Part shown: in pieces, positions 1-34,466 of the stretch | How positions within the stretch are numbered: the first letter of the stretch is position 1 | Layout: each line of letters begins with the position of its first letter | Assembly (NCBI GenBank): GCA_001179505.1 | Contig: CDMY01000583.1 | Coordinates: forward strand, 1 to 47,310 | Source: Vitrella brassicaformis CCMP3155 | Taxonomy: Eukaryota; Protista; Chromerida | DNA length: 47,310 nt | Reading direction: 5' to 3' | Notes under the pieces: model-generated | What the model was told of the DNA's origin: nothing | Seen by the model: only the letters and a program-made list of their open reading frames with translations | The model's database searches: none | Position numbers and translations under genes: made by a program

Positions 1-1507
1 GGGCGGGAAGGGAGGTGAGCAAAGTCAACGTCGGCGGTGTACGGTGGTGGCAGGATGTCGGTGCGGTCAGTCTCACTCAGAATCCCTTTGACGGCTGGTC
101 ATCGGATAAGTTCCCATCGATTCACAACCTGGTCATGGGGCTGTCAGGTACGCAATGCATTTCAATGGACAATTCTGGCTGGTCCGTCTTATGTGTGCAT
201 TTCTGTTGTCTGTGAGCTATTCCTCAGTGCCCGACAATATGGATACCTCTTCCGCCTGCGAGCTGATCCGCGAAGGCATCTCATCCATTGTGGATGGCGT
301 GCGGGGCCTGGAGCGTTTAACGCTGTATGTGTATGGCGGCGCCGCTCAGAAGGGGCTCTTATCTGTGACCATTGCATCAACGGACAGTAAGCTGTACATC
401 AGAAGTGGTCTTGGCGTTGCTGCGAGTCGGCTACTGGCAGAGAAGATGCCGAGCAAGATCAAGGAGGTGACGTTTGGCAGACATGTGAGTGCAGCGGACA
501 GAAGGAGCGTTCTGGAGGAGGTGGGGGCGGGGAGGGAGGTTGGCCTCGTCACTGTCGGTGAGCAGTATGGCGCATTGGACGGCTGGCGATCGGATAGCTT
601 CCCATCGATTCGCGGCGTAGCAATTGTGTTGTCAGGTACGCAATGCAGTGTTAGGAGACGATTCTGGCTGGCTCGTTCATCTTATGTGCGTGTTGTGGCC
701 CTGTATGTGTATCGTCACTCAGTGCCGGATGGTTTGGAGGCCTCTGCGGCTGCCGAGCGGATCCGCGACGGCATCTCATCCATCGTCAGTGACGTGCGCG
801 GCCTGGAGCGTTTGACGGTGGATGCATATAGCGGCGCCGGTCAGCAGCGGTCCTCATCTGTGACCATTGCATCAACGGACAGTGAGCTGCACATCTACAG
901 TGCTCTTGGCGTTACTGTGGGACGACTGCTGGCAGAGAAGATGCCGAGCAAGGTCAAAGAGGTGATGTTCGAGCCAACAGTGAGTCCAGAAGGCAGAAGG
1001 AGCGTGCTGGAAGGCCTGGGCGTGGAGAGGGAGGTGGGCACTGTTCGCCTAACGGGGCCTTCGGTGAGTCTCACTGAGGGTGCATTGGACGGCTGGCAAT
1101 CGGACAACTTCCCATCGATTGGCCATGTGCGTATCGGTGAAGCATATACAATGGACGTAGAAGGTATGTACCGGAGCAGACAATTCTGGCGGCTCATCTT
1201 GTGTATGTGCTTTTGTTGCCGTCTGTGTGTGACTGGTCACTCAGTCCCCAACAACTTGGAGGCCTCTGCAGCTGCCGAGCTCATCCACGGCGGCATCTCA
1301 TCCATCGTCGGTGGCGTGCGAGGCCTGAAGTGTTTGACGCTGAGGGTGCGTGGCAGCAACGCCGCTGACGCCGCCATTCGGCAGCTGCTCCGCACAGAGG
1401 TCTTCGCCCACTTCACCATCGACACACGTGAGAGACGATGGCGTTGGGGACGAAACTTCCGATGGAGTAGTTACGCCATTGAGCTGACTGCAACGCGTCG
1501 CTCTTAG
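1..1507 (+). CDS. 3' part of an uncharacterised expanded-family gene (family A, copy 1), 5'-truncated by the window edge, with internally repeated exon/intron modules
   Basis: ORF 155-1507 repeats 'GALDGWxSDxFPSI', 'VPDGLEASAAAExIRDGISSIVxxVRGLERLT' and 'RLLAEKMPSKxKEV', which recur in the genes at 35-37 kb, 39-42 kb and 45-47 kb. GT-AG introns at 148-227, 636-722 and 1164-1244; stop TAG at 1505-1507. Confidence 0.75.
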
Positions 1508-13968: not shown

Positions 13969-14005
<37 letters not shown>

Positions 14006-15700
14006 CACAGTACAGGACACTCTTCTCACCTGCCCTCTGTGTGTGTGTGTGTGTGCAGGGAGATTCCTCACTGGATTGGCCGCGACCAACTCATCCAGAT
14101 CTTCAGCTTCTGGGGCGATGTCGATTTCTGCGACATCAAGACGAACCGCAAGACGGGCAGGTCCATCGGCAAGGCCGTCATCGCCTTCAGGACCATCCAG
14201 CAGGCCAAGACCGCCATGGCCAAGATGCAGGGCCATGGGCCGTTCACCACTGGGCAGCGGCTGAAGATCTCCTTCAGCAACAGGGACAGCCGCCCACAGC
14301 AGCAGAAGGGCAAGCCGAGCAAATCATGTAACCGACCGTCGACACACATGAGGGCTGTTTATGGCTACTCTCCTGGTGTGTGCGTCACGGCCATGCAGCG
14401 CCGAAGCCCTCAAGCGCGCCGTCCCCCTCTCACCACTCGGCGGCAGTGCTGGAGGGCGGGTATCACACCTTCCCGGTGTTTGGGCTGGAGCCCTACTTCC
14501 AAGTCACATCGCCACTGAGACGGTACACCCACACCCACACAGAGGGAGAGGGGAGGGGGGTGGGGTGGTCGGGCGGGCGGGCGGAGTGATTAGACTTGAG
14601 TAGTGCACGGGGCAGTGGTCCCGCACCCGAGCCATCCCGTGGGAAGCAGTGAGGGTGCGCAGGGGTTATGACCGTCAGCCACCGTGTGTGTGTGTGCCTC
14701 TCTCCCTCCCTCCCTCCCTCCCTCCCCCCCTCACTCTCTCTTTCTCCCTCACTCTGATCTGTGTGTGTGTGTGTGTGTGTGGCTTGGGCCAGGTATATCG
14801 ACGTCATCGGCCACCGTCTGTTGCTGCGCGGCGACCGTCGGCAGCGGCAGGGTGGTCAGGGGCGCCAGGCGAGCAGCAGCGTGTCGGAGCTTTTCCTGAA
14901 GCCCAAAGAGGGCGAGGACAGAGAGGAGGCCTCGCAGTGGGTGGCGGAGCTGCCCAAGATTGTGCTGAGATACAACCTCCGCTTCAGAATGGTCCGTGCC
15001 CCCCACAGACACACACACACACACACACAAACCTCTCCCTCTGTGTGCGTCAGGTTCGGCGCGCCGAGCAGCAATTCGAGCTGATGTCCTTGTGCAAGAC
15101 CCTCCGCGGCAGTAATGTCAAAACCACCGCCCTCGTCGGGCCCCTCGGCACCTCCGGCATCACTCTCCTCTTCCCAAAGCGGCTGCACCTCAGGGGCTGC
15201 CCCTACCACCCAATGCCCATCAGGTGCGATTGATGCGCACCTACAAGGGCGACGGCAGCCATGAGTGTGGTGGGTGTGTGTGGGTGTGTGTGCAGGCAGC
15301 TGAAGCTGCCGCTGACTGTGTGGCGCAGCGACAAGATGCAGTGCATCTACCACAAGGGCCGCGAGCAGCAGAGACGATTCGAGGGCGACTTTGTCAGAAT
15401 ACGGTCAGCACACTGACACACACACACACACACGCACACACAAGAGAGAGATTGGGTGCAATCGCAAGCCGTGTGTGGTTGGTTTGTTCGTTCAGGTCTC
15501 TGGAGGACCGCAGTCACGTGGACACCTGGTTCGAGGACTGCTACCTCAAGCCCTTTGAGTCGACCCTCACTGTCGAATTTGGCCTTAACAAATGTGGTGT
15601 GTGCCCCCCAGACACCACCACACAGAGAGAGAGGGGGAGGGAGGGAGGGAAGACACCCGCTCACCGACATAGTTGCTGCACCGATTGGACCTTCTCCCCG

Positions 15701-15736
<36 letters not shown>

Positions 15737-18280: not shown

Positions 18281-18317
<37 letters not shown>

Positions 18318-21300
18318 TAGGGCACTGAGGTGGACTGTGTGCTGGCCTGCTGCAAAGCCACGGACCGCGTCATACTCGTCGGTGAGGGAAAATGCCTCCA
18401 ACATCCTCACTCCCCACCCACACACCCACACACGCAGACACAGACAGAGATTGCTGAGGCGTTGCTGTCTGTCTGTCCTTCAGGCGACCACAAGCAGCTC
18501 GGCCCCGTGGTCATTGAGAAGAACATGTATCCCCCCGTCTACAAAGTCCTCGAGAAATCCCTTTTCGAGCGGCTCTTTGTCTCAGAGAAGCAGCGGGAGG
18601 AGATGCGAAGACAGAACCAGACCCAGCAGCAGCAGCAGCAGCAGTCGCCCCAGGCCCAGGAGGGAGACAACAAAGCCGCCACTGGCAGCCGCCCGCACCG
18701 AGGGCAGAAGGCGATCCCGCACATCACCTTGCGCAAGCAGTACAGAATGCACCCGAGGATCCGCGAGTTCATCTCGACGGAGTTCTACGAGGGGCAGCTC
18801 AAGGACAGCGAGGAGACCCGAGATCTCGAGTATCGGCTGTGGACACAGCCCGACATGGCGGTGTTCCCCTGGCCCGCCGGCAGACACAAGCCCATGATGC
18901 TCTGCGACAACACCACCCCACACCAGCCCAGACAGGTCGGTGGGTCGGTGGGCATCCACCCTCCCTGGTGGCACTCCCTCTCCCTCTCCCCCTCTGTGTG
19001 TGTGTGTGTTTAGGCCAACAAGATCGAGGACGTCATAGGTCAGCAGGAGTCGTCGATGGGCCGGCAGTCGCAGGTGTCGCCCTACTCCCTCACGAATCCT
19101 GGCGAGGTGCGCCTCGTGGCCGCCTGCTACCAGTACCTCATCGGCATGGGCGTCAGCGCCAAGGACGTCGGCATCATCACGCCCTACAAGGCGCAGGTCG
19201 GTCGGCCTCTCTAAATGGGAGGGAGGGAGGGAGGGAATACGTTTCTCTCTTTCTCTCGTCATCAATCAGGCTGAGATGTTGCGCGAGGCGATAATGGAGG
19301 TCGTGGGTCTGAAGGCCCCCTCCGAGAACTCTGTCCTCGACACACCCCTCCGCAACCTCAGCAACGGCCGCATGAGAGCCGGGGGGAGAGGGAGGGGCGG
19401 GAGGGGCAGGGGGGTCTTTAACGGCCGTGGTGTGGCTGACCTGGTGGACGGCGCTGCTGGTGCGGGTGTGCCCTCGGTGTCCATGTTGGGGTGCGCCAGT
19501 GGGGAGGGCGACCCCGACGACGTGTTGCCCATCATCGGGACGGTGCACGCCCTGCAGGTGGTCCCCGGGACTCTGTCACACTGACACCGACAGACGCACC
19601 TGTCCATCCATCCGTCCCTTGTGTGTTCGGTGTGGGGGGGGGGGGGGGNNNNNNNNNNNNNNNNNNNNNNNNNNNNNNNNNNNNNNNNNNNNNNNNNNNN
19701 NNNNNNNNNNNNNNNNNNNNNNNNNNNNNNNNNNNNNNNNNNNNNNNNNNNNNNNNNNNNNNNNNNNNNNNNNNNNNNNNNNNNNNNNNNNNNNNNNNNN
19801 NNNNNNNNNNNNNNNNNNNNNNNNNNNNNNNNNNNNNNNNNNNNNNNNNNNNNNNNNNNNNNNNNNNNNNNNNNNNNNNNNNNNNNNNNNNNNNNNNNNN
19901 NNNNNNNNNNNNNNNNNNNNNNNNNNNNNNNNNNNNNNNNNNNNNNNNCGCAGGGGATGGAGCGTGACTATATCATCATCTCCTTTGTCAGAAGCGTCAC
20001 CGAGGAGGAAGTGGCCACTGGTACTCACACACACACACACACGCACACAACACAAACACAGAAGCGCCCCTCCCCTGTGTATGTGCTCTTGTGGGCGGTG
20101 TGGTGTTGCAGGTCGTTCTGTGGGCCTCCCCCGGGAGCTGGAGTCGCAGTCTGAGGGCCTGCCGATGCAGCACGAGCAGCTCTTCAAGCACATTATGCGG
20201 CGGATGCTCAGAAGCTCTCTCGGCTTCCTCAATAACAAAAGGATCCTCAACGTGAGGGCGAACGACCCGCCGCCCACAGACTCCCACACACACACATGGA
20301 TGGATGTGTGTGTGTGGGGTGGGGGGCGTTAGGTGGCTTTGTCCCGAGCCAAGAGGGGGCTCCTGGTGTTTGGCAACTTGGAGGTCCTCTCGTCAGGTGG
20401 GTGTGGGTGGGACATCAGACAACAGACACACGCGCACAGACACGCAGTGCTCTCCGCTCTGTGTTGTGTGTGTGTGTGGGTGCATTGATTGGTTCAGAGC
20501 TGATCTACGAGCGGCTGATCCACCACTACCGCAGCCTCAAGTGCCAGATCTCCACAGAGCAGTTCAAACAGCTCATGTGAGAAGAAGCCATACCCACACC
20601 CACACACCCTCCCTCTGTCTGGTGTGTCTGGTGTGTCTGTCAGGGAGGGCACCATCAACCCCCACGCCACCCCCCCTCCCCCGTCAGGTCTCCCCGCCGC
20701 TGACGACATCGGCATGGACGTCACAGAGGAGGACCGCATCAGGCAGCTGGACATCCTCCGCTCCATCAGAGCTGGTGGTGGCCGCGAAGACGCCAGCCCC
20801 ACACACAGCTCTCCTGCCGCCGCTGCAGCTGGGGCCCCCGCTGCGGCGGCGGCGGCTGCTAGTGGCGGCGGAGGGGTGGCGGACGTCGATGCGCTCAGCT
20901 TATGGGATGACGACGCCTCGCCGAGGGTGAGAAGACACTCGAGGGCGCGGTCATGGTCGGCCATTGTCACGGCGCTTCTCTCGTCTGTCTGTCTCATGAT
21001 TACAGGCGAACGACGATCTGCTGAGCGGTTCTGAGTATGAGGGCTCCGACGATGAGGACTCCTTCGACCAGTATGAGCAGCGGGAGGTCTTCAAGCAGCA
21101 GTACTTCTTCGGAGGAGGCAAGAAGCACCAGCAGCAGCAGCAGCAGCCCAGCGTGTTCACCAAGTTCGCCAAGGAGCTACACAACGGCACTACAGCAGCA
21201 GACAACGAGCCGGACTCGCCCCCAGTGGCACCACGAGCTCCACCACCAGCAGCAGCAGCTGCTGCTGCATCGCCTCAGACGCCCAATGTGCCTGTGTCGA

Positions 21301-22898
21301 TGGGCCGTCGACCGTCCGGACTAACACCGGGCTCTCCGCCATCAGGAGGGAGTGGTCGCCGGTCGGGCAGTGGGCAGAGCTCTGCCCGACGGGCTGTGGG
21401 GCCATCGATGTCGATCGACGAGCTCAAAATGCTGGTACGTCTTTTGTGTGCCGAGCTTCCATCCATCCATCCATCCATCCAGAGCCTGCTGCCGTTGATG
21501 TGATGGCTGGTGGTCTCTGTCTGTGCGTGCCTTCCTCAGGCGGCACAGCGGGCCGAGGGCACCATAGCTACCGCCACGATGGAGCGTCAGGCGTCGAGCC
21601 CGCTCAACAACCTGCCCAGCACCACACACCAGCTGCCGCCCCTCCCACCCCCCTCGGGCCAGACAGGAGGAGGCCGCAGCACATCCGCCCCACTCACGTC
21701 CCCCGCACTCAATGGGCCGCCGGCTGTCGATGATCAACAAGCGCCCCCTCAGGGGACCACTCCTGCTGGCGCTGCGGCAGAGTCCGAGCAGGCCTCTTCA
21801 TCGCAGAGTATACCAAATCGCCGGCCGCCGTCTGTGCCGGACGTCCCTGCGGGTCGGGGCATCTTCGCAACTGGCCATGTCGCCCACCGGCAGCAGCAGC
21901 CACCGGACGGCCTGCAGAGCAATGGCGTTGCTACTGCGGTGAATGGGGACCACCCTCCTCTGGCTCCGCGCAGCAACGGCACCAACAATGGTCGAGGTGG
22001 TGGTGGTGGTGGTGAGGTGGTGGGTGCCTGTCGGATGTGCCAGGAGCCGATTGAGGTGGACTTGTCGGGCGGCATACGGCAGGAGGACCTTTCCTTCATC
22101 GAGCTGAGGCTGTGTCTGCAGCACTTTGCCGCACTCAAGAAACAGTTCATGTGTGTGAGAGAGCCGTCACACACACACACACACACAGATGGATGGATGG
22201 ATGTGTGTGTGTGTGTGTGCAGCGAGATGGAGCAGTTCTGGCGGGCCAAGTTTGGCAACCAGCCGGAGATCGGCATTGTCTTCGGCGTCATCTGTTCCCA
22301 GAGCTACCAGGCCGTATGCGCACGCACACACAAGGCGAGATGCCACTCAGCCAGTCATTGTGCCCGTTGTTTGATTTCAGCGTCTGTCTGACATACTGCG
22401 AGAGTACGGCGACGAGTGGGGCAAGGTGATAGTGGAGTTCGTGGCACACAAGGGGGTCAACTTTGAGCTCACCGACGCTCAAGGGAGAAGACCATGTGGG
22501 CTCATCACACACACACACATGCAGTGGCTGGTGGGGTGCATTTCCCTCTCTCTCTCTCTCTCTCTGTGTGCGTGTGTGTGTGTGTGTGTGTGATTGTCAG
22601 TTGAGGCTGCGGTTCTCGATTTCCAGACGGCTGCCATCCGCTGCCTATACAGCCTCTGTAAGGACACACACACACACACACACATACACACACACAGACT
22701 GGGCGATGTGTGTATGTGTGTGTGTTGGCTGGAGTGGCTGCCTGTCCTGCAGGTGACACCAACAGTGCGTTCTTCATGGAGCACCTCGACCAGATAGACA
22801 CCGCCCTGGCCGTCGAAAGGCTCGACTGGAATCCCCACACCAGCCCCACCGCACAGACTCACACAGAGAGGTCCGAGCAAAGCAATGGGGTCAACTAG
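10169..22898 (+). CDS. Large multi-exon RNase II/Dis3-family (RNB) exoribonuclease fused to a UPF1/DNA2-like SF1B helicase (HELZ2-like architecture), with an RRM inserted in the RNB domain
   Basis: Cold-shock motif VVILGISERNRAYHNDLVTIEL. RNB motifs FTIDPP|DAEVLDDAISI, VYVHIADVEHF, SKIRSQARLSY, LVKEFMTAVN and YFQVTSPLRR|YIDVIGHRLL. Helicase motifs QGPPGTGKS, ILLCAPSNKAADNL, VIIDEAAQ, VILVGDHKQLGP, QYRMHPRI, GIITPYKAQ, QGMERDYIIISFVRS and LNVALSRAKRGL. Two N gaps lie inside introns. Stop TAG at 22896-22898. Confidence 0.85.
11964..12263. other. Assembly gap (300 N) followed by a poly-G run
   Basis: N run inside an intron of the RNB-helicase gene. Confidence 0.99.
12400..14830 (+). other. RNB (RNase II catalytic) domain exons
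   Basis: TIDPPDAEVLDDAIS at 12420-12530 and TSPLRRYIDVIGHR spliced across 14500-14820. Confidence 0.9.
14059..14290 (+). other. RNA recognition motif (RRM) inserted within the RNB domain
   Basis: EIPHWIGRDQLIQIFSFWGDVDFCDIKTNRKTGRSIGKAVIAFRTIQQAKTAMAKMQGHGPFTTGQRLKISFS has an RNP1-like 'GKAVIAF' and the typical RRM spacing. Flanking intron phases (2 and 1) keep it in frame. Confidence 0.85.
17130..20400 (+). other. UPF1-like superfamily 1B helicase domain exons
   Basis: LNDFQCKAVRQAM...QGPPGTGKS (Walker A ~17200), DEAAQ (18192-18206), GDHKQLGPVV, KSLFERL, YRMHPRIREF, TPYKAQ and LNVALSRAK. Confidence 0.92.
19649..19948. other. Assembly gap (300 N) preceded by a poly-G run
   Basis: N run inside an intron between TVHALQ and GMERD. 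Confidence 0.99.
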
Positions 22899-23750
22899 CT
22901 AGTGCAGCTTAGATCAGCTCAGCTCAGCTAAGCCAAGCTTAGCTACATGGGCCAGCAGTGAACGGCCAAAGGAGGGGGGCGGGGAGGCCTTTTTGTTTTG
23001 TCGCTCTCTCTCTCTCTCTCTCTGTCTCTCTCTGTGTCTGTCGGCTCACGTGGGTCGTCTTTAATCTGGCTGACGGACATCTGCCTCTGGTGCGATCGAG
23101 GCGAAGACATACATACCCCTCTCTCTATTGTCTGTCTGTGTGTGTGTGGGGTGCATGAGAAAGAAAGACAGAAGTGTTTGCTGCTGCTGCTGCTGCTGCG
23201 CTGCTGCCGCGCTGCTGATGGCTGGATGGCTGGATCTTTTTTCGCCGGCCCTCTGCCGTCCGTCTGCTTTCTTTTGAGGGCCACGAGCCACGGAACGCTC
23301 CGCATCCTGCACACATGGCCGACAGACAGACAGACAGACAGACAGACAAGTTGGCGGGCACAGGCGGGCAGAAAGGTAAGGACTGTTTTAGTGCGGCGGC
23401 ATCGACGAATGGCATTTTCTCTCTGTGTGTGTGTATGTCTGTGTGGGAGGGGCAGAGGCTCGTTCGTTTGTCTGTCTCTGCTGCTGCATATCGGCGTGTG
23501 CTGTGTGGGGGGCGGAGAGGGGAGGAGGGGGTGGGGCATTGATGTGTGTGTGCTGTGTGTGTTTGTGTGTTATATAGATCTCGACAGACAGACAGACAGA
23601 CAGATGCATGCAGTGGGTGGATCGACCTCGCTATTATGCCGAATGACCGACCTTATTGCCGACCTCTGTCAGCACAAAACAAAAAGACCCACACATTATC
23701 CGTCCGTCTCATCGCCTAACGACACACGACACACTGAGAGGAGAGCAGCT

Positions 23751-26700
23751 CTACAAATCGAGCAGCCGGCCCAAAGCGCTCTGCACAAAGTCGCTCCATT
23801 GGACAGTCCACCTGAGGTGCAACACACAGACAGAGACAGAGACAGAGAGAGACACTTGCACAGTGCATTTCTCTCTCTGTTGTCTTTTGTCACCTCCAGT
23901 ATCTTCTGAACACCGCACCATCGACCCCCGCCGCCCCAAACAACCAATAAACAATCCTGAGAAGGCCAAAGGCCAAAGGCCAGCCAGAGGGAGAAAGTCG
24001 CACAGTTCCCGCCACCAAAGGGCGAGTGAGACGCACACACGGTTGGCAGCTGACCTGGTGTCTAAGTTGGAGAGAAGCGTGTAGGGCAGGTAAGCATCCA
24101 TCGGCTCATCCCCGTCGGCCACCAGCACCTGGTTGGCCACGAAGTGGGAATTCCCCGTGTATATCAGCTCGAGAGGCACCGGCTGTGGCAAGGACACACA
24201 CACACACACACACACACAAATGGGCCGTCTGCTGCCCCTTTTTGCGCCTCTCTGCCAGTGCTTACCTCTTCTCTCTGGTGCGCTCTCGTCACCCGGGCAA
24301 GGGAGACGGCAGCAGACAACCCGTCCCCCTCTGCAGAAATGTCTCCACAAGATGATTGAGGCCGCTGAGGCCCCTCAACACGCACCAGCCAGTCCCCCTG
24401 CCGCACCTCGGCAGCCGACACGTGCCTCTGTCTTGACAGGGCGGACTCGGCGCAGTCGCCTGCCGTCGTCAGTGGATCGAGGCATATTGTGGGAAGCCGC
24501 TCACCAGCGACAATGGGCAGGCGATGAGAGGGGGAGAGGGTCAGATGGAGGGGAGGGGCGGGGGCGCATGACGTCCTGTTGTGGTGGTGCAGCGGTTCGG
24601 CCACTAAGTCGACGACCTCGGTGGTATCAGACGCTGCATCACGTGACAGATGTCTCACGTGTGTCTTTCTCTCAGTGTCCTTCTCTGTCCTTTGTTTGCT
24701 CACCTGCGTAAGACTCCCTGAAGTAGACGTCAGTCAGTTCGACCCCTCTCGTCTTGCTGAAGGACAGAACCCGGTCGCCCACCACCACTTCCTGCGCCGG
24801 CACCGACTCGAGCTTACGAAAGTCCACTCTGTCCGATGACCCCACAAGGGCCGCAAGCAGGAGACCTGCCGCCGCGGTGAGCTGCCATGAGGACATCCAA
24901 TGCATCATTGGTGGAAGGAACCATTTGCCGAAGGAGAAGGAGTCCCATGGGGCCGAGGGGGGGTCACGTGATGGGGGCAGCCTCCAGAGGGATGCGTTGG
25001 GATCGATGCAGGTCTTCTGCGAAAAGGACTGCACACACGTGAGCGCCTCGTCGGGCTGGCCGACCCACGAGCCGTAGAGACACTGGTAGTCTACACACAC
25101 ACGCACACACACAAGTCTCAGAGATGCTTCGGTCTCCCTTATTGCCGGTGCTGTGTACGAACGTTTGCCGGATCTCTCCCCGTGGAGCCTCGCCACTGGG
25201 TTGGCCATCTGTTGTTGCCAAAACCACTTTAAGTAGTAGACGTGCCTACACGACAGACAGATCATGTCAGCCAGCGTGGATGGATGGATGGATGGGTGGA
25301 TGGCTGTCGTGTCCACCTACACGCTGCTGGGGGGCCCGATCCGAAAGATTCTCCAGACTTTGACAAAGATGTTGACTGCCGCTGGCGGCCTGATGCCCCA
25401 GATGGTCTTCCTGCCTAGGCCGGTCTCAATCGTGCGGCGACGCTGCAAGCAGCCTGATGGATGGATGGATGGACACACACATAGGGACAGGCTGGTCTGT
25501 CTGTGTGTGTGTGTGTGTGTCTGTGTGTGTCGTAATTTCACCGACCGGATGCGCCGCCCCGGACGGTGATCCGCTTGCCGGGTGCGTCTGTCATCCAATC
25601 TTGCCCGTGGTAAAGTGTCTTGGGCTCCGTCTGCCCCCCGATGCTGCCGGCGACGTTCCATTGGGCTGCAACGGTCTGGTTGACCTTGGAGAGCGGAGTC
25701 CACCCTTGGCAGTGAGGCGTATAGCAGAAGGCGTAGTATCTGCCTCGGTGCCGCCGCACCCATGGCCGCTGCTTGACGAAGTCGTCATAAGCAAGGTTCT
25801 CAAACTCGACAGACAAGGGGCCCGCCACGTTGTAGCGGACCATCTTGTGGCTCTCGCGGAAGGGAACCGGGCACATCTCTGCGATTGTCCGGGGCGTGCG
25901 AGAGACACACACACATGGATGGATGGATGGATGGGTGGCTGTCTTTGTTGGTGGGATGGTTGGCATACTCATGCAGCTGAACGGTGAGGTGAGGTAGCCG
26001 TTGAAGCAAATGGTCTTGAAGGCGGGCCGGGCGTCCCACGTGTCCTGTTGGGGCTCAGGCAGGTACCCGTCGGCACACCGCACCTCTGTCGCAGCGCCTG
26101 GGACGATGAGGCCGTGCATGGGCGGAATGGGGTAGCCTTTCTCTGGGTGGTAGTAGTTCTGCTTCCTCCCGTCGGCGTACACCATCTCATAACCAAACGG
26201 CTCGCACATCGCTGCGGTGGACAGAAGACAGGATCACACAAACTCTGCTGTAAGTGTCCGTCCGCTGCTTCCCCCTCCCTCCCTCCATCCCTTGGTCACT
26301 TACGATGGCACTGCATCTCGGGCTCGGACCAGTGGCCGTTGCTGCAGTGCACCTCTGACCTATAAGGCGGATCGAGCACGTTGGTGGCAAAGGTCCACCT
26401 GCACGTGGGTCTCTCTGCGGCGGATGCCTCTGCTTCCCCTGGGTAAAGGAACGCCCCCTTAGTGCAGCACGACACCGTCCGCGTGGCCCCGTTCCTAGCG
26501 GTGCCTGTGTTGTGGGCGGTGTCCATGCTGGTGCCGCGGCCCTGGACAATCATGGAGGTGCCGAAGCGAGCATCGAGGGCGTAGTCGTCCTCAGGCACGT
26601 ACTCGGGGCAGTTTGCTGCAGGCCAGCGGATAGGACAAACAGACAGAGACATGTGTCTAAATGCCTGTGATTGGGCGGCGGCTCACGGACCTTCGCAGAT

Positions 26701-29700
26701 GAGCAGGCGGCTGGTGTACTCGCCGTCCAGACATCTGACGGTCTGCCGATTGGCGCCCGCCTCAGTGAGCGACATCGCCTGCCCACACACACATGCCATC
26801 ACACCCATCACATCAACACACACAGACCTATGGAAGGAAACAGATGCACTTGCCGCTCTCTCTCTCTGTGTCTCCTTCCTTGTTTAGAATGGTTTTGGTT
26901 GCTTACGCACGTCAGAGTGTCTGATTGCGCACCGTATCTCCAGTGACCTGCCCGAAGGGAAGAGCGACTCGGTGAGGTGGTACCTCGGCCGAACGATCTC
27001 GTAGCGAGACTGGTTGGTCACCGCCACGTCATTCGCCGTCGCCCACTCCACATAGTCAATGCACATCTCTGACAAACAGACAGACAGACAGCGCCGTGGC
27101 TCAGCTCTGCCCTGGCTCTTACTTCTGCATCTCAACTGGAGGGGCCACCAGCTGCCGTCGTTGCATTCAATGGTCTCCCCCTCCGAGCCGCTCACAGCCG
27201 AGTACATCTTGGCGCAAAACACCACCACGACAGTGCTGTGGCGAAGCGACTCGCCGCCGTCTATGGCATAGTTGGTGATCGAGTCTCCCAGATGCTCGAA
27301 ATACACAGGCAAAGGCGGGCAATCCCCTGACGACACACACACACATCACGTCTCTCTCTCACTGCGATCGACCGTCTTGTCTCCCTCACTTCTGCACTGT
27401 ATGCCGGTGAGCGTCCAGACACCGTCCTGACACTCGGTGTCCTCAATGGGCCGCGAGAGCGTCGACTCAAAGCCTCTCGTCGTATTGCACGACACCAGCT
27501 GTCGGCTGCCGTGAAGGTAAAGAGGCAGCACTCGCCCCGTGTCGGGATCGGTGCGGTTCTCGGCGAGCGGAGGGTTGTCCGGCGCGTCTCTCACGACGTA
27601 CCTCTCCGCCTCCTCGTCAGGACGGTAGATGGTCATGTCCATCCACGAGAGGCAGTTGCGGGGGCATGCAAGTGTGGGACGGGTCCACTCGCCATCGTCG
27701 CAGTTGATGGTCTCGTTCTCCGGTGGCGGATGTGGGCAGAACACGGGATCACACTTGAGCACGAAGGCTGATCCGTGCATCCACATTGCGTCGCTGGGGG
27801 AGAAGAAGGGATTCGATTTGTCCTCCTGAGTGAGGCGCAACACGTCGTGAGGGATGGATGCGGGCTTCATGCGTGTGTCTGTCTCTCTCTCACGTCAGTG
27901 AGGGACCCAGGCCTTTTGCAGAACTCTGGTGGGTCGCAGAGCATCCGCTGGGGCTGCGGCATCTTGAAAGGCGGACAGCGGGCTATAAAGACACACTTAC
28001 AGTGGATCGTTATGATCCATTCGCCTTGTTTCTCACGATGGCAGAAGTGCTGCAGCTCTGTCCACTTGCCGTCGAGACACAAGACGTCACACGCGTGTCC
28101 GCTGCAGTCCTCCACCTCGATAGGCACACCAGCCACCTCCCTCCTCTCCTTCAGGCGCGTCATCGGGCTCGTCAGATCGTAACCCTCCGTGCAGTTGACG
28201 GCCATAAAGTCGCCTTCGCGGTAGCCGATGGAGCGGTCGAGCGGCTCATTGAGAGGGCGGGGGGGATACAGCTTCAAGAAGTTGAAGGCCTGGTCTAACA
28301 GTTTCTTCTCGCCCACTGCATTGACCAGCTCGTGGTAGTTTCCACTGAAGCTGACATTGTAGAGGGGGGAGAGCTGCAGGAAATCCGCACCGGGGCAGTT
28401 GCCTGTGTGTCGACACACGTACACAAAGATGCAAAGACAAAGACTACGTTTCTCTCACGTGTGTGGTCTTCCTTACGCTTGCAGCGGATGGCCTGACGCC
28501 CCCAGGTGCCATTGTAGCAGACAACATTGTCAGGCTGCGTCTCCTGCCAAGTCGGATCGCTCCATCCGTCCGCACACCTGATCCACCGCCAGCTGTTGTG
28601 CCTGAAGTACCGGTCTCGCGTGAGGTGCGAAGACCGCATCGATTCTTGCGGCTTGGAGAGGTAAGCGATGCCGTCGCTGTCGTATGTGAGAGTCGACGCT
28701 TCGAAGGTGGGCAGATGGGAGAAGGCGTATGCTTCGACAGGGAGAAATGGGGGATAGTAGGGGCTGCAGCGGCCAACAGGCGACGGCAAGACGACCGTAA
28801 ACAAGGGAAACAAATCGTGTTCGTGTCCTGAAAATCGTGTGTCTCGCGCCTACGTCGGCATTGTATCGTGATGGGCTCGAAACGGCCATTATGGCAGCTG
28901 AGGGGCTGCTGATAGTCGGGTTCATGAGGCGGCATGGCAGCGAAGCCGCGATACGGGTCACGGCTGCCTGATAAAGACAACGATAAGGTGTCTGTGCGTG
29001 GTTTGATGTGTCTGTCGTTTCCTCTTCTGTCACCCACCACGGCACTCGACGTATTCGATGTCGCCATGCTTATACGCGTCTTTGATGGCACTCGCGGCCT
29101 TGACGTACTCGACACCAGCGATGTACCGCTTCTTCAGAGGCGGGGGGCTGTCGGCTGCACAAACACCGCCAGACAAGGTCGGCGTCTGTCTGTGTCTGCT
29201 TCCTGCCCTTTATTTATCTAGCGTGTCTGTATCCGCCGCAGACAGACCTTTGCATTCAAAGTCTCTCGGCGTCCAGAGCCCGTCCATGCACCGCAGTGTG
29301 GTGCAGTCGTCGGACCCAAAGCCCTTTTTCCACCCATCCCTCTCCCCAGGCCTCCCGCAGCTCACCGTCCTCCATGCCGGTGCCTCCACATCAGGCCCTT
29401 CGCGCGCTGCGCACCTAAACACCACACACGAGCCGTGTCTCGGAAAGGAGCTCAGCTGGAAATCGGGTGTGGGCCGGGCGTGAGGCGTTGTGTTGGTGGA
29501 TGGGGGAGGGGGAGGTGACGCCGGCCCCTCACACGCTGTGGTGTTACTGAGGTCATTGGCGGAGTCCGCCACACGGAAGCTGTACTTGAAGGGGTCGATC
29601 AGGTCGGCAAGGTCTCGACACGACCCTGACAACGGCACACAGAGCCCTCATGGATGTGTCATGCTATTCCCTCTTATCAGCTGACTTTTGCATGAGAGGA

Positions 29701-32700
29701 AAGGCATCGGGGGGCCCCACTCGCCCCGCAGGCACGCAATACTAGCCTGTGCACCGGGCCTTGCCGTTCCGTTGAAAAATGACCGCTCATTCGCACACCG
29801 CACATAGAGCACATCTCCGTGCTGATACTCGCCGCCCGCCCGCTGGCCCAACACCTCGTAAGCCGCGTCCATGCCAGGTGCACTGCACTTCTCTGCAACA
29901 GGCAACAATCCACAGATGCACGGCAAGGCAGAGACACTCTGGACAGGAATGTTCCCTCCCATGGTGTGTGGTAACTGACTGTTGCACTGGAAGGGCGGCG
30001 GGAAGGGCGACCATGTGCCATTGATGCACACGGCCTCGGCCTGCCCTGGCTGTCTCGGGGTGGCGGATGCGCCGCTGAGCGTCGAGCATTTTATGTTGAG
30101 TTTGGTGCCGTGGGGCAGCCAGGCCTCGGTCGTTTCCTGCCCAGAGGTGAGGGACGCCTCGTACAGGTCGGGGAACTCGAGCTTCTGTGCCGGATACGGC
30201 TGGCAAGGAGCTGAAGAGAGAGAGAGACAGACAGCACGGCAAAGCAAGTCTGCCATACTTGCTGGCGGCTTCTTGATCTGCTGACCCACCCATGCACTTC
30301 AGCAAAGCTCCCGTGATCCTTCCCCTGTCGCAGACCAGCGTCTGCGCCCTATCGGCTTTCCCCGCATCCGGCACAAACGTCCTCTCCGTGTTGCAGCGAA
30401 CGGTCAGCTCAGTTCCGTGAGGCTGCCAGACGTCACTGCGCATTCTCGATACCTCCAGTGGGTCGGTGATCTCGATGATCTGCTCCGGGGCGGGGGCCTT
30501 GCGCGCAGAGAAGAATTGCCGGGGATCGAGGGTCGAGGCCCTTCTGGCAGCTCTTGGAAAGATGTAGGCATCAAAAGGGTGGAAAGAGGGAAAGGCGGGG
30601 CAGTCCGGCCCGCAGATGACGTGTTGTTTGCTGAAGTCCCCCTGGCTGCAGACCAGCGCCTCTTCGTCAGGCCCCATATACGGGTGGTAGGGCTTCATGG
30701 CCGCGCATCTGATGGTCACGCGAGTGCCGTGAGCAGAGGTTCCTCGCAGGGCAGCCTCGTTATCGATGTCATAGAGGTCGATTGCTGATGGGGGCTCCGG
30801 TGGACCGTCTGGCGGCCAGTAATTGCGATGCAGCTCGCCACCGACATAGGCAGACGATGGGCCGAGAAGCTTCACAGGGAGACAGGGTACTGTCAGACAG
30901 AGACACCAAGAGACGATGTTGGTGTCCTGTGTCTGTGTGTCTGTGTTGCTCACGTTGGCAGTGGATGGACACCCGCCCCCACTGGCCGTCTGCACACGTG
31001 ACGGTCTCTTCTTCATTGGGCATCTCCCTATCCTTGACAGCACTGACTGCGGGGTCCCTCTGACACATGACCCTCAGCTTGAAGCCGTGGGCAAACGACC
31101 GGGCCTGGGCGATTTCCCTCTGCGGCGGCTCGGTTCTAAATCGCCCCTCAGGTAAAGGGAACCATGGGCCACATGGTGCTGGAGACCAGAGAGACAGAGA
31201 GCGAAAGAGACGTTGACGTGCGAACGTTGGCTTGGCCTGCGCACCTCTGCAATGCAATCGATTGGGCGTCCAGACTCCCTCCAGACAGGTGAGGGTCTGC
31301 CGGTCGATCACGCTTTCCATCATTGTGATGTCGGGGACCTGCGTGCAGCTGATCTCTGCAGTGCTGCCATGGCGGAAAGGCGGACTCGATCGGCCGTTGT
31401 AGATGACCTGGTAGGCGTTGGTCTGCCCTCGACCCTGGTACAGCTCTGGATAACCCATGCACTGCTCTGCCCATTGCACACACACACACACACACACACA
31501 TAGATGGAGGAAAAAGTCTCGTTTTGGAGTCCTTCATGCGAGTGGCGGTTTGCTCACTGAAGCACTGCAGGTCACTCCGAGAGTACTCATCAACGCCGCC
31601 AAGATCGCCCCCCTCACACTTGACGATATCGGACGCTTCGGCGCCCCCCACCCTCTCAGGCTCGGCGTAGCCGTTGCGGCTGTCGCAGGACAGCCGAACC
31701 GCCGTGCCATAAGGCACCGTGGTGATGTTCTCGACCCTAGTGCCTTCCATGCCGACATACTCGACGTCAAACATGAGCTCGGCCGTTCCGTTGCCCACAT
31801 AGGGGTGAGGGCCGCACGGAGCTGACAGCACCGACACAACACAGTGGTAAGTCGAGTCTCTTTGTTGACCGATTACTCTTGCAATCAAGCTGGTAGTCTG
31901 TCCACTTCCAGTTGCGGGGATCGTCGCAATCGGTGTCCTTGCCATAGAATGTGCACCCGACGGTTTCCGAGGCCTCCTGCCCTTCACGTGGCACCGATCC
32001 CGCCCCACACGAGATGGAGACGGTTGACCCTGGCGGGAGCAGACGAATCGTGGCTGTCGGGGGATCCAGCACGTATATGTGGGGGTTGAGGCCGCGGAAC
32101 CGAAAGGGAGGGCACTGGCCGTGGCATTCAAGGACGACAGGGCTCCATGCGCCGTCGGTGCACTGCACCTTCTGGAGGGTCGATTGCAGTGCCGCATTGA
32201 CTGGTGGCAGATAGCCGGGCTGGCACGATACCGTCCGCTCCGCCCCCTCAGCGAAGCCTGTGTCTCCCCCATCGACGCGATACCTCTTGTCAGACAAGGG
32301 CTGGACATAGTCAGGGGGCTGCAGCAGAGTCGACGGGCACGGCTCTGCCAAAAAACGAAAGAGAGACAGACAGATCGAAGACCATCTGCAGCACCGGGAG
32401 ACAGAATCTCTTACGTTTGCACGGGAGATCTAGCTCATCGATGAGGCCGTCGCTGCAGAAGAGGCTCGTCACAGCGTCTTCGACGTGCAGAGGGGGCAAA
32501 AACGGCAGAGCGCAGGTCACCTCAATGAGCTCACCGTGGCAGATCCGAGACGCCCGCAGCGGGCTCAGCACTTTGTAGCGAGGCGCCTGTGCGGCTCCCA
32601 GGTCTGTTTGTGGCCACCATGGGGTGTCACTTGGCACGCAGTCCTCTGTAGCGGAGACACAGATGAATAAGGATAACAGGGGAGACAATGTGGGGCGTAC

Positions 32701-34466
32701 TGAGGCATTCGAGGATCTTTGGGGGACATGCACCGGACTGGATGGCACCACACTTGATGGTGTCCTCTTCAATAAAGCCGTGGTACGTCGTGTTGCCGAC
32801 GGTCTGGCACCGGAGCGTCAGCACACTGCCGTAGTGGCCGGAGCGGCGCAGGTACTTCGGGCTGAAGACGTTGATGCCCCTGTCGCCGAATTTGGCCAAG
32901 TATGCGTCGACAGGCTGCTGCAGCCGCTGGAGCTCCTTGATATACGGGGGGCACATCTCTGAAAGCGCCGCAACGGTTGGGAAGGGATGTACGTGTGTGC
33001 GTGTTTTCCTTGTCATGTGTGTGTGTTCCTCTGTCCATATACTTCTGCAGTCGCAGCTGCAGTCGTCCGGGGTCTTTTCGACGTCGCATTCTTCGTTCTC
33101 TGCCTGCACTTCGCCGTCGCCACAACGCTGGTCGAAGTCTGCCGAGGAGAGGAGGAAGCGGTCGCCGCTCACATCATGCAGAATCATGTCTCCAGTGTCT
33201 CCGGGATGTTTGGCTGCTTACTGAGGAGCTCAGATATCTGCTGAACAGCGCCTTTAATGTTGTTCTGTAGCCTGCCTATGTTGGCGTAATGAAAGTAGCG
33301 GATGCGGCCTAGATAAGCAGCAGTGAGAAAGAGGGGAAGAACCATCCATCCATCCACTGACTGTTGGTCAGAAATCGTCAAATCGTACGTACCTCTGAGA
33401 CATCTCTGCCCCCGGTGGTCACATCCCAACGTGAGCGGGCTCGGCAGCATCAAGTTGGTCACTATCAGGTCGGGCAGCCGCACCTGGACCTTGATGTTGC
33501 CCATCATGAAGATCTGCATCGTCGACTGAGACACCACAAAGTGAAACACAAACCCTCTCTCCGACCGCCAACAGATCTTGGCCATCCCTGGCGGCCTCCC
33601 CTCGCCACCTGCCGCCTCCTTTCCTCCTTGTCTCGGCTTCTCGGGTGCCGTGCCGTTGTGAATGGGGTCGAGAAGGCCGATGTAGAGGTGGTCAGGGTCC
33701 CAATCACCGTCCTCGTCAAAAGCTGCCACGGCCCCCAATCTGAAGCCCCAGAAGTTGTCCAGAAATACGACGGGCTGCTCGGGGGAAGGGGCGCGGTCGA
33801 ATGCGAGAAGGAGGGTGAATGTGAAGCCCTCGCTCTGGCTTTCCGCCCATCGGAAGCAGACTCTCTTAAGGCCATTCGGCGCGGTGATCACATATCGGCC
33901 TGACGAGTGGGAGAAGGGACAGTAATGAAAAGACAGCCTTGGAGAGCATCTCACCTGGCGCGAAGCCGAGCCATGTGGTGCCGCCACTAGGAGGCTTGTC
34001 ACTGCAACATAAGAGAGAAAAGACACCAGGCACAAGGATCATGCATGAGGCCAGACGTACAAATGAAGCAAACGGCTCACATCTGGTGCAAGTGAGGCGG
34101 GTGGTCTTCACCATCGAAGATGACTCCCTCCGTCCCGAGAGCGGCGTCCTCCCACCGCCATGGAAGCCGTTTGTCCTGCGCAGTGACCTTGAGAGAGATG
34201 ACCTCGGCCCGGTGAACAAGGCAGACGGGCAGCAGCTCGCCCTTTGCAATGACCCCCTCCGTCTCCCTCCATCGTGCATCGCCAATCGTCTCCCGCAATG
34301 CGTCCTCTTCAGGGCCGCCGGCAAGGCTTAGCCATTCTGTCTGTGTCGCCGTCTCAAAGCGTTGATTCTCTGACAGCAGGCTTGGCGCTGGCGACGGTCT
34401 TGTTGCAAGCGGCAACAGTGCCGTCAAAACGATGGCCGCAGGGCAGCAACGGTGTCTGGAAGGCAT
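23751..34466 (-). CDS. Secreted multi-Sushi/CCP-repeat protein with a C-terminal Hedgehog-like Hint domain and an SRR-like tail (Hog-type autoprocessing precursor)
   Basis: Signal-peptide-like MPSRHRCCPAAIVLTALLPLATRPSPA. About 20 modules of the form C-P-x(n)-HG-x-x-x-x-C...x-C-x-D/N-G-x-W-x(4-6)-C, e.g. FRHGSTAEISC...LTCLEGVWTPNRLHC and YLHGSRQLVSC...ECQDGVWTLTGIQC. The last exons splice in phase into the Hint domain and end at ...QSALGRLLDL* (23751). Confidence 0.8.
24114..25010 (-). other. Hint (Hedgehog/intein) domain
   Basis: Spliced: T|CIDPNASLWRL...ESVPAQEVVVGDRVLSFSKTRGVELTDVYF...LHLTLSPSHRLPI...HVSAAEVRQGDWLV...ARVTRAHQREE|PVPLELIYTGNSHFVANQVLVAD. This matches the Hint blocks (N-terminal Cys, GDxVL, L-x-L-[TS]-x-x-H, A-x-x-V-x-x-GD, F-V-A-N-x-V-L). 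Confidence 0.8.
33045..33124 (-). other. Myxococcus-type cysteine-rich repeat (CGDGxxxxxEECD motif)
   Basis: CGDGEVQAENEECDVEKTPDDCSCDCR. Confidence 0.7.

What the first reader, a model, noticed from the sequence alone, without database searches (positions are those of the whole stretch)
23751..34466. Giant secreted Sushi-repeat protein ending in a Hedgehog-like Hint autoprocessing module
Seen: signal peptide, an unknown ~250-aa domain, a Cys-rich repeat, about 20 Sushi-like modules, then T|CIDPNA... Hint domain with the nucleophilic Cys (codon 25010-25008) and the block-B His (LTLSPSH). Established: Hedgehog/Hog proteins use this Cys and TxxH for an N-S acyl shift, cleave themselves and attach cholesterol to the N-terminal product, and Hog domains are known in some protists including alveolates. 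A multi-Sushi cargo on a Hint domain is not an architecture I recognise. Inference: a self-cleaving, possibly sterol-anchored surface adhesin or coat protein.
Basis: partly seen in the sequence, partly recalled or inferred. Interest (0 to 1): 0.85.

Follow-up and report, generated by a model that had tools for sequence, protein, structure and literature searches.

The report
Giant Sushi-repeat protein with Hedgehog-type self-cleaving end
This stretch of the coral-associated alga Vitrella brassicaformis is one 35-exon gene for a giant secreted protein with 22 Sushi repeats ending in a very divergent Hedgehog-type self-cleaving (Hint) domain, an unusual pairing, though this copy has a splice-site defect that puts the only available RNA assembly out of frame.

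Summary
Window 23751-34466 (minus strand) is the coding sequence of Vitrella brassicaformis CEM24571.1 / A0A0G4G7G2 (2679 aa, 35 exons).

- **Sushi array:** there are 22 modules. A profile built from them hits complement factor H at E 1.3e-12.
- **Hint domain:** Pfam and sequence searches of solved structures see nothing in the C-terminal 310 aa. An AlphaFold model matches only Hint folds. The best match is the Hedgehog autoprocessing domain 1AT0 (Z 16.9, 144 of 145 residues), and the TCID cysteine (codon 25010-25008) aligns with Hedgehog Cys258.
- **Catalytic residues:** Cys, SxxH and a nearby Glu are invariant in three paralogs. Hedgehog Cys143 is replaced by Asp. A 47-75 aa hydrophobic insert splits the first hairpin. 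A 60-aa aromatic tail is the best-conserved part.
- **One transcript:** spliced RNA contigs join the Sushi and Hint exons. The TAG at 25317 lies inside an intron.
- **Defect in this copy:** an ancestral splice acceptor near 28775 is lost. The RNA uses a cryptic AG at 28764-28765, which shifts the frame. The annotation restores the frame with an acceptor the RNA does not support.
- **Other copies:** a third copy is broken outright. The scan has already noted this family on other DNA of this genome.

Self-cleavage and any sterol adduct are inferred, not shown. I rate it a new variant of the known Hog-protein kind, of moderate interest.

The parts
23751..34466 (-). Whole coding sequence of CEM24571.1 / A0A0G4G7G2 (2679 aa, 35 exons)
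   Evidence: 100% match of exon E to P0001; exact look-up gives the accession, organism and a contig length of 47310; exon map
34398..34466 (-). Probable signal peptide (aa 1 to about 23)
   Evidence: Read from the sequence: basic n-region followed by a 15-aa hydrophobic stretch; no predictor was run
33223..34304 (-). N-terminal beta-rich head, probably LamG / ConA-like (aa about 55-343, with introns)
   Evidence: Atlas features score 0.96, with 58 of 100 hits in Laminin_G_3; 52% identical to P0003; fold model failed; no Pfam, PDB or NCBIfam hit
33044..33136 (-). Cys-rich CGDG...EECD unit (aa 344-374)
   Evidence: Sequence; no family hit
25035..32959 (-). Array of 22 Sushi/CCP modules (aa 375-2363, with introns); the last module is split by a conserved insert of about 130 aa
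   Evidence: Module list; alignment A3 with 4 invariant Cys; PDB profile hits to factor H 1.3e-12, FXIIIB, CR1 and CR2; Pfam Sushi at 22.2 bits against a cutoff of 20.7
28731..28776 (-). Splice lesion. The ancestral acceptor before the RC(S)PYY codons is lost. The RNA uses the cryptic AG at 28765-28764 (exon starts at 28763, frameshift). The annotation starts the exon at 28731 (in frame, but drops Cys1 of module 14).
   Evidence: Joint 28763|28854 in X4; frame analysis showing a stop about 131 codons later; sequence; paralog L001 keeps cacAG|AGCGCTGC; annotated exon start
24114..25010 (-). Hint module, Cys2372 to Asp2619 (exons D, E, F, with introns)
   Evidence: AF2 model; Foldseek; VIA 1AT0 Z 16.9 with model 27..276 = Hedgehog 258..402, and inteins aligned 1..last residue at model 27..274
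25008..25010 (-). Codon of the putative nucleophilic Cys2372 (T|CID), 8 residues after the last Sushi cysteine
   Evidence: invariant in 3 paralogs; aligned with Hedgehog Cys258
24819..24977 (-). Insert of about 50 aa, hydrophobic and poorly conserved, in the beta1-beta2 hairpin of the Hint. It is kept in the RNA contig.
   Evidence: pLDDT<50 for model residues 41-87; a longer insert is present in P0003 and P0004
24714..24716 (-). Glu2470 in the invariant VYFRESY motif, at or next to the position of Hedgehog Asp46/Asp303
   Evidence: Invariant columns. The position is assigned by motif and by distance from the GD motif (inference; the tools print no residue pairs).
24524..24535 (-). Block B, S2507-P-S-H2510 (counterpart of TxxH)
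   Evidence: LSPSHRLP is invariant in 3 paralogs
23751..24113 (-). Conserved C-terminal tail (aa 2620-2679, with two introns), aromatic and hydrophobic. It occupies the position of the Hedgehog sterol/adduct-recognition region.
   Evidence: It is the best-conserved segment among the paralogs; helices are predicted at low confidence; AFDB Hedgehog alignments extend to query residue about 306; no 19-aa window reaches KD 1.5

Best explanation
The region is one gene of a small Vitrella-specific family. Its parts, in order, are:
1. a signal peptide;
2. a LamG-like head;
3. a short Cys-rich unit;
4. 22 Sushi/CCP modules;
5. after an 8-residue linker, a highly divergent Hog-type Hint domain;
6. a conserved aromatic tail.

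The most likely mechanism, by analogy with Hedgehog, runs as follows. Cys2372 attacks the Thr-Cys peptide bond (an N-to-S acyl shift), helped by His2510 of SxxH. The resulting thioester is then resolved by a nucleophile, either water or a lipid, sterol or wall hydroxyl recruited by the tail and possibly activated by Glu2470. This releases the 2371-aa Sushi array from the roughly 310-aa Hint-tail fragment.

The architecture, the fold, residue conservation and the joined transcript are shown. Cleavage, the nature of the adduct and the location of the protein are inferred.

In this copy a lost splice acceptor makes the dominant RNA form in the one data set out of frame. Full-length protein would require the minor acceptor used in the annotation.
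For: - Identity and exon map.
- RNA: spliced contig X4 record 17 joins 26158..25969 and 25878..25545 to exons D and E and beyond. Fifteen GT-AG joints agree with the annotation, all but the one at 28763.
- Sushi.
- Hint fold; atlas features point to Hint clusters.
- Conservation: TCID, VYFRESY, LSPSHRLP, SHxVAN, Asp and the tail are conserved in P0001, P0003 and P0004.
- Family architecture: P0003 carries the same collinear architecture in one model. P0004 lies 213 nt downstream of a 2435+ aa gene.
- Constraint: dN/dS is about 0.3 against the L001 copy (rough).
- Precedent: Hog proteins with varied cargo are known in alveolates (PMC2362128).
Against: - No Pfam Hint hit at E<=10 in any of the three proteins, and no PDB sequence hit.
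- The model has mean pLDDT 57 and was built from 3 sequences.
- Hedgehog Cys143 is replaced by Asp, and block-B Thr by Ser.
- A roughly 50-aa insert sits inside the fold.
- The RNA-supported acceptor at 28763 shifts the frame upstream of the Hint.
- Module 13 has Ser where P0003 has Cys1.
- The unplaced part of X4 record 17 is 218 nt where the annotation needs 219. This is unexplained.
Confidence: 0.6

Rival explanations
1. This copy is a transcribed but decaying paralog. It is spliced and polyexonic, but the lost acceptor before module 14 truncates translation at a premature stop. The Hint end is then a relic here, and function resides in the intact paralog P0003.
For: - The cryptic acceptor is used in the only RNA assembly, with a frameshift and a stop about 131 codons later.
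- The annotated in-frame acceptor is not seen in the RNA.
- Cys1 is changed to Ser in module 13.
- The hydrophobic segment of the last-Sushi insert that P0003 has is absent here.
- There is a possible 1-nt shortfall before exon D in the RNA contig.
- Sister copy L001 is clearly broken, with a frameshift plus a stop in exon B.
- An earlier scan note reports a pseudogene copy in this family.
Against: - All 35 annotated exons are open.
- There are no in-exon stops or frameshifts against P0003 over 2679 aa.
- The catalytic motifs and the tail are intact.
- Contigs drop minor isoforms, so an in-frame isoform is not excluded.
- Downstream exons show RNA depth similar to upstream exons.
Confidence: 0.3
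2. The Hint works like an intein or BIL domain rather than like Hedgehog. It cleaves at both ends, using the conserved Asp at the terminal-Asn position. In the paralogs with Ser at +1, it would splice or ligate the Sushi array onto the conserved tail.
For: - Asp2619 aligns with the last residue of inteins (model 27..274 = intein 1..end).
- Asp is invariant, and the +1 residue is Ser in P0003 and P0004.
- The tail is more conserved than the Hint.
- The Tetrahymena BIL2 domain is among the top Foldseek hits.
Against: - The +1 residue is Gly in this copy.
- The penultimate His is absent.
- The best structural match is Hedgehog Hh-C, and AFDB hits are mainly eukaryotic Hog proteins, with alignments running into the tail.
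Confidence: 0.07
3. There are two separate genes: a Sushi-array gene ending at the TAG at 25317 and an independent small Hint gene.
For: The annotation of the third copy is split in just this way.
Against: - RNA contig X4 record 17 spans both sides.
- The TAG overlaps a GT donor.
- Exons B and C are conserved at protein level in P0003, and P0003 is one model.
- The split in L001 coincides with a frameshift and stop, not with a gene boundary.
Confidence: 0.03

Closest known systems
Hedgehog C-terminal autoprocessing domain (Hh-C; PDB 1AT0, 6TYY) and Hog proteins of protists and nematodes (Buerglin 2008, PMC2362128)
   Same: - Hint fold over 144 of 145 residues (Z 16.9).
- Cys at position 1, directly after a secreted cargo.
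- Block-B His.
- An acidic residue near the Asp46 position.
- No intein HN end.
- A hydrophobic, aromatic region of 60 aa after the Hint, where Hedgehog has its sterol-recognition region.
- Cargo-swapping is typical of Hog proteins (warthog, groundhog, quahog, hoglet).
   Different: - No Pfam PF01079 match.
- Ser for block-B Thr, Glu for Asp46, and Asp for Cys143.
- A 47-75 aa insert in the first hairpin.
- The tail is better conserved than the Hint.
- The cargo is a 2371-aa LamG-like + 22-Sushi array, not a Hedge, Wart or Ground domain.
Inteins and bacterial-intein-like (BIL) domains, e.g. NpuDnaB intein 4O1R and Tetrahymena BUBL BIL2 6Y75
   Same: The same fold (Z 15-17); a Cys1 nucleophile; an F/G-block-like SHxVAN...D motif, with Asp at the terminal-Asn position.
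   Different: No penultimate His; no Asn; Gly at +1 in this copy; not inserted in a host protein, but terminal apart from a 60-aa tail.
Complement-control-protein (Sushi/CCP) arrays such as factor H and CR1; apicomplexan Sushi proteins (ASP/RON1)
   Same: Tandem modules of 68-106 aa (larger where inserts occur) with four invariant Cys, a conserved G and W, mostly one module per phase-1 exon; profile E 1.3e-12 to factor H.
   Different: Individually too divergent for Pfam (only one module reaches the cutoff); several carry long inserts; none of the known arrays ends in a Hint domain.
Other Vitrella copies: P0003 (2743 aa), L001 copy (P0004 + upstream gene), A0A0G4H288 (1025 aa 'Sushi domain-containing protein')
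   Same: P0003 and L001 are collinear with this gene module by module and have the same Hint-tail. A0A0G4H288 is the top AFDB structural hit (27% identity, residues 724-1009).
   Different: P0003 has a strongly hydrophobic 38-aa stretch in the last-Sushi insert and Ser at +1. L001 is broken in exon B. A0A0G4H288 is much shorter and was not recovered by any sequence search run here.

Membership tests
Hint superfamily (Hedgehog/intein fold) | Hint beta-fold | tested here: met
   AF2 model core pLDDT 70-87; all 29 Foldseek PDB hits at E<=1e-3 are Hint proteins; 82 chains at Z>=8, top 1AT0 at Z 16.9
Hint superfamily (Hedgehog/intein fold) | Nucleophile (Cys/Ser) as first residue of the fold | tested here: met
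   Model C27 (Cys2372) is the first aligned residue against Hedgehog 258 and intein residue 1; invariant in paralogs
Hint superfamily (Hedgehog/intein fold) | Block B TxxH | tested here: met
   SPSH in all three paralogs: His kept, Thr replaced by Ser
Hint superfamily (Hedgehog/intein fold) | Match to curated sequence models (Pfam PF01079, related Hint models, or solved Hint sequences) | tested here: not met
   No Pfam family at E<=10 for P0001 C-terminus, P0003 C-terminus or P0004; no PDB sequence hit with profiles A1 or A2. UniRef does name P0004 'Hint domain-containing protein'.
Hog (Hedgehog-type Hint + adduct-recognition region) | Sits at the C-terminus of a secreted cargo, with no intein HN + nucleophile end | tested here: met
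   Signal-peptide-like N-terminus, Sushi cargo, and an ...VLVAD-G end
Hog (Hedgehog-type Hint + adduct-recognition region) | General-base Asp46 (Asp303) | tested here: inconclusive
   An invariant Glu in VYFRESY lies at or next to that position, judged by motif and spacing; the tools print no residue-level structural pairs
Hog (Hedgehog-type Hint + adduct-recognition region) | Cys143 of Hh-C (branched intermediate, PMC12054796) | tested here: not met
   Asp2619 occupies the position six residues after the conserved Asn, in all paralogs
Hog (Hedgehog-type Hint + adduct-recognition region) | Helical hydrophobic region of 60-70 aa after the Hint (SRR/ARR) | tested here: inconclusive
   A conserved 60-aa aromatic tail with helices predicted at pLDDT 35-46; AFDB Hedgehog alignments reach query residue about 306
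Hog (Hedgehog-type Hint + adduct-recognition region) | Autocleavage with sterol or other adduct transfer | not testable with these tools
   Needs biochemistry
Sushi / CCP (PF00084) | Modules with four conserved Cys, plus G and W before Cys4 | tested here: met
   25 aligned modules: 4 invariant Cys, G in at least 90%, and an aromatic residue (mostly W) two positions after it in most
Sushi / CCP (PF00084) | Profile similarity to bona fide CCPs | tested here: met
   Factor H 1.3e-12, FXIIIB 1.5e-10, CR1 and CR2; Pfam Sushi at 22.2 bits (cutoff 20.7) in this gene and 37.2 bits in P0003. The whole-protein Pfam scan gave nothing.
Intein / BIL | C-terminal Asn (or Gln/Asp) followed by a Cys/Ser/Thr +1 nucleophile | tested here: not met
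   Asp-Gly in this copy; Asp-Ser in P0003 and P0004
Laminin G / ConA-like lectin (N-terminal head) | Beta-sandwich fold or profile match | tested here: inconclusive
   Atlas features 0.96 to Laminin_G_3 clusters; model pLDDT 33, unusable; no Pfam, PDB or NCBIfam hit

The most novel reading that the evidence does not exclude
The family is a distinct class of Hog domain that works without Hedgehog's Cys143. It would use its invariant terminal Asp, the hydrophobic hairpin insert and the ultra-conserved aromatic tail to transfer a 2371-aa Sushi array onto a non-sterol acceptor, such as a membrane lipid, a cell-wall glycan or the tail itself by splicing. That would be a Hint-driven way to tether giant adhesins covalently in an alga close to apicomplexans.
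Probability: 0.12. Interest if true: 0.75.

Novelty: new variant of a known kind. Interest (0 to 1): 0.45.

Why it matters
Hedgehog-type autoprocessing is well understood only in animals. The protist Hog proteins listed by Buerglin (2008) have never been characterised.

This is a Hog domain fused to a huge Sushi array in a free-living relative of apicomplexans. It lacks Cys143 and has a better-conserved tail than Hedgehog. It would give a natural test of which parts of the Hedgehog mechanism are ancestral, and of what adducts other than cholesterol can be attached. It also bears on how alveolate surface adhesins are anchored.

The case also shows that Hint domains can escape Pfam completely. 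Woo et al. 2015 listed HINT only for Chromera genes in the supplementary table that was searched.

In practical terms, the public gene model needs correction, and this copy may be non-productive.

Tried and rejected
- **Pfam on exon pieces, the whole protein and ten segments**: only weak Sushi hits and no Hint.
- **NCBIfam**: nothing.
- **PDB sequence profiles of the Hint region and the head**: nothing; one chance CopG hit at E 0.44.
- **Exhaustive HMMER with exon E against 1.84 billion representatives**: only the gene's own product and a spurious repeat protein.
- **Word-index searches in three length ranges**: only Vitrella P0003 and P0004. No relative of the Hint-tail from any other organism was recovered by sequence.
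- **An extra 141-nt intron removing the Hint insert:** rejected. The RNA contig is continuous across 24704-25087, and the paralogs have the insert too.
- **First mapping of Hedgehog Asp303 onto the SAAEV motif:** this was wrong. Asp46 lies before TxxH. It is corrected to the VYFRESY motif (note).
- **Chimeric RNA contig through a paralog as the cause of the 218 versus 219 nt discrepancy:** unlikely, because L001 is only 75-78% identical at DNA level. An enumeration of alternative GT-AG exons found no solution that keeps the conserved exons.
- **AF2 model of the head**: failed.
- **Atlas search of the last-Sushi insert**: uninformative.
- **A true transmembrane anchor in this copy:** not supported. 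No 19-aa window reaches KD 1.5.


Full report
**What is there.** The window is a whole 47,310-bp contig of Vitrella brassicaformis CCMP3155. An exhaustive HMMER search with one exon returned a 2679-aa protein that is 100% identical over that exon. An exact look-up names it CEM24571.1 / UniRef A0A0G4G7G2, 'Sushi domain-containing protein', seen on one contig of 47,310 bp. Mapping it back to the window gives 35 exons on the minus strand from 34466 to 23751.

**One transcript or two.**
- I laid four public runs on 23400-29300. Three of them (X1, X3, X5) are unspliced and DNA-like. X4 is spliced RNA.
- X4 gives 15 listed joints, all CT..AC on the plus strand, which is GT..AG for the gene. After adjusting by one base where the tool allowed it, every one has canonical sites.
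- X4 record 17 (2175 nt) carries exons 26158..25969 and 25878..25545 (Sushi modules 21 and 22). It also carries the Hint exons 25087..24704 and 24633..24266 and continues into the 3' end.
- The next two small exons (25245..25163 and 25090 onward) encode peptides conserved in the paralogs. HVYYLKWFW...GERSGKHYQCLYGSW here matches HIYYFKWFW...GEWGAKQYECLWGVW in P0003.
- The two-gene reading is therefore rejected.

**The Sushi array.**
- Splitting the protein at the short Cys-x(2-4)-Cys linkers gives 22 modules.
- Thirteen of them were aligned with twelve from the paralog P0003. The alignment shows four invariant cysteines, a near-invariant Gly, and an aromatic residue (mostly Trp) before the last Cys.
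- A profile of that alignment hits complement factor H (E 1.3e-12), coagulation factor XIII B chain (1.5e-10), CR1, CR2 and MCP among solved structures.
- Pfam is nearly blind to the individual modules. One module reaches the Sushi gathering score (22.2 bits against 20.7). The whole-protein scan returns nothing. P0003 gives 37.2 bits.
- The last module is split between Cys2 and Cys3 by an insert of about 130 aa that is conserved in the family.

**The N-terminal parts.**
- The N-terminus has a plausible signal peptide. This is read from the sequence; no predictor was available.
- The 'unknown' head is beta-rich. Protein-language-model features place it among Laminin_G_3 / ConA-like clusters (score 0.96).
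- The structure model failed (pLDDT 33) and no sequence library sees the head. LamG is therefore a lead, not a result.
- Residues 344-374 are a single CGDG...EECD cysteine-rich unit.

**The Hint domain.**
- *Sequence methods fail.* There is no Pfam hit at E<=10. There is no solved-structure sequence hit with two- or three-sequence profiles. Nothing beyond the gene's own product turned up among 1.84 billion representatives.
- *Structure does not fail.* An AlphaFold2 model of residues 2346-2679, built on three Vitrella sequences, has mean pLDDT 57 but 70-87 in the core strands.
- *Foldseek.* Against the PDB it gives 29 hits at E<=1e-3. All are inteins, BIL domains or Hedgehog.
- *VIA re-alignment.* The Drosophila Hedgehog autoprocessing fragment 1AT0 ranks first: Z 16.9, rmsd 2.5 A, 144 of 145 residues, model 27..276 on Hedgehog 258..402.
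- *Residue positions.* Model residue 27 is the Cys of T|CID (Cys2372, codon 25010-25008), so it occupies the place of Hedgehog Cys258. Inteins align from their residue 1 to their last residue on model 27..274, so Asp2619 occupies the terminal-Asn position.
- *AlphaFold DB clusters.* The best hit is another 'Sushi domain-containing protein' of 1025 aa (A0A0G4H288; organism masked as own genome). It is followed by eukaryotic Hog proteins including hedgehogs and C. elegans qua-1. Many of those alignments run on into the tail.
- *Atlas features.* They independently point to Hint, Vint and PT-HINT clusters.

**Catalytic inventory.** This rests on motifs and spacing. The tools do not print residue pairs, and the Hedgehog numbering comes from my own knowledge and from PMC12054796.

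| Hedgehog Hh-C residue | Here | Comment |
|---|---|---|
| Cys1 | Cys2372 | present |
| Thr69-x-x-His72 | Ser2507-Pro-Ser-His2510 | Thr replaced by Ser |
| Asp46 | Glu2470 in VYFRESY, or its neighbour | invariant motif |
| Cys143 | Asp2619 | differs |

- All of these residues are invariant in the three paralogs.
- The +1 residue after the Asp is Gly in this copy and Ser in the other two.
- Two further features set the family apart. A poorly conserved hydrophobic insert of 47-75 aa sits in the beta1-beta2 hairpin; it is kept in the RNA contig and is present in all copies. A 60-aa aromatic tail (DEPxDAxxPYTxLSNLDTRxVYWLxGAAGV...FRxYWRW) is the most conserved part of the whole C-terminus.
- In this copy no 19-residue window reaches a Kyte-Doolittle mean of 1.5. 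I therefore read the tail as an interfacial, SRR-like element rather than a transmembrane anchor.

**Family.**
- Word-index searches in three length ranges found only Vitrella proteins. P0003 is 2743 aa, collinear module by module, and 36% identical in the C-terminus. P0004 is 400 aa and named 'Hint domain-containing protein' by UniRef.
- P0004's locus (L001, CDMY01000399.1) shows it lies 213 nt downstream of a gene of 2435+ aa on the same strand. That upstream gene is collinear with this one from residue 53 on.
- The split coincides with a frameshift plus a Trp-to-stop change in exon B. The third copy is therefore broken.
- A rough dN/dS of 0.30 over 2164 codons against L001 indicates past purifying selection. 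dS is saturated, and the HSPs cross introns.
- Earlier notes of this scan had already flagged the same architecture on other pieces of this genome, one of them judged a transcribed pseudogene. This finding is therefore a repeat discovery of a family, on new DNA.

**Is this copy intact?**
- The annotated reading frame is open throughout and collinear with P0003. The RNA, however, disagrees with it at one junction.
- X4 contig 19 joins 28854 to 28763. The annotation starts that exon at 28731.
- With the RNA-supported acceptor the frame shifts, and a stop follows about 131 codons later.
- The genomic sequence still encodes the start of module 14 (R-C-S-P-Y-Y-P-P-F, matching R-C-P-P-F-F-P-P-F in P0003). 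But where L001 has the acceptor cacAG|AGCGCTGC, this copy has gttGG-CCGCTGCAG|CCCC.
- The ancestral AG is gone, and a new AG inside the Cys-Ser codons is used instead.
- The annotated alternative keeps the frame but deletes Cys1 of the module.
- Module 13 has Ser where P0003 has Cys1.
- The unplaced part of X4 record 17 between 25545 and 25087 is 218 nt, whereas the annotated exons need 219. I could not explain this with canonical splice sites or with a paralog chimera.
- Contigs hide minor isoforms and only one RNA run was available. I therefore put about 0.3 on this copy being non-productive.

**Separately, the annotation is wrong in one place.** It removes 29518..29414, which is open in frame and conserved in P0003, including the G-S-C-V-x-F strand of module 12.

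**Comparison with what is known.**
- Hog proteins, meaning a Hint plus an adduct-recognition region behind a variable secreted cargo, are documented in nematodes, choanoflagellates, red algae, mosses and alveolates, including dinoflagellates and Cryptosporidium (PMC2362128).
- Woo et al. [quoted passage not shown]
- Their supplementary table lists HINT (cd00081) only for five Chromera genes and for no Vitrella gene.
- No paper in the searchable library holds both 'Hog domain' and 'Sushi'.
- I therefore file this as a Hog-type protein by fold, position and key residues. The exceptions are no curated sequence-model match, no Cys143 and a large insert. The cargo is new.

**Verdict.** It is a new variant of a known kind. 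Interest is moderate (0.45).

Noticed in passing
window 26873-27071: Depth is 4-8 times that of the neighbouring sequence in both the DNA-like runs (X1, X3) and the RNA run (X4). Many contigs break off at 26856-26873 and at 27071-27091. This is a multi-copy segment that coincides almost exactly with exon 27068..26911. That exon is also unusually conserved at protein level against L001 (81% versus 30-60% elsewhere), although the L001 DNA is only 79% identical.
   Followed up: partly
window 29414-29518: The public gene model removes this stretch as an intron. It is open in frame, and its translation, including the G-S-C-V-x-F strand of Sushi module 12, is conserved in paralog P0003. This is probably an annotation error.
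   Followed up: partly
window 25088-25544: The part of RNA contig X4 record 17 lying here is 218 nt. The annotated exons (133 + 83 + 3 nt) need 219, and the exon D piece stops at 25087 rather than 25090. No canonical splice combination explains this. If it is real, it is a second frame problem just before the Hint.
   Followed up: partly
L001 9560-9940 (CDMY01000399.1): The third family copy has a frameshift and a Trp-to-stop change in the exon equivalent to 25453..25321. The public annotation splits it there into a gene of 2435+ aa and a 400-aa 'Hint domain-containing protein'.
   Followed up: yes
P0003 residues 2312-2349 (paralog, another contig): A strongly hydrophobic 38-aa stretch (KD 2.17) sits inside the conserved insert of the last Sushi module. 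It is absent in this copy, which has a 16-aa deletion and charged residues there. It could be a membrane hairpin. Its meaning for topology is unexplained.
   Followed up: no
window 23818-23861, 24185-24226, 25445-25534, 25890-25952, 26159-26195: The introns are full of (TG)n/(CA)n and CATC-type microsatellites. The read tool masks them as repeats, which hides some splice joints.
   Followed up: no
window 10169-22898: The neighbouring gene downstream was noted by the scan as an RNB exoribonuclease-helicase fusion. It is unrelated to this finding and was not examined.
   Followed up: no
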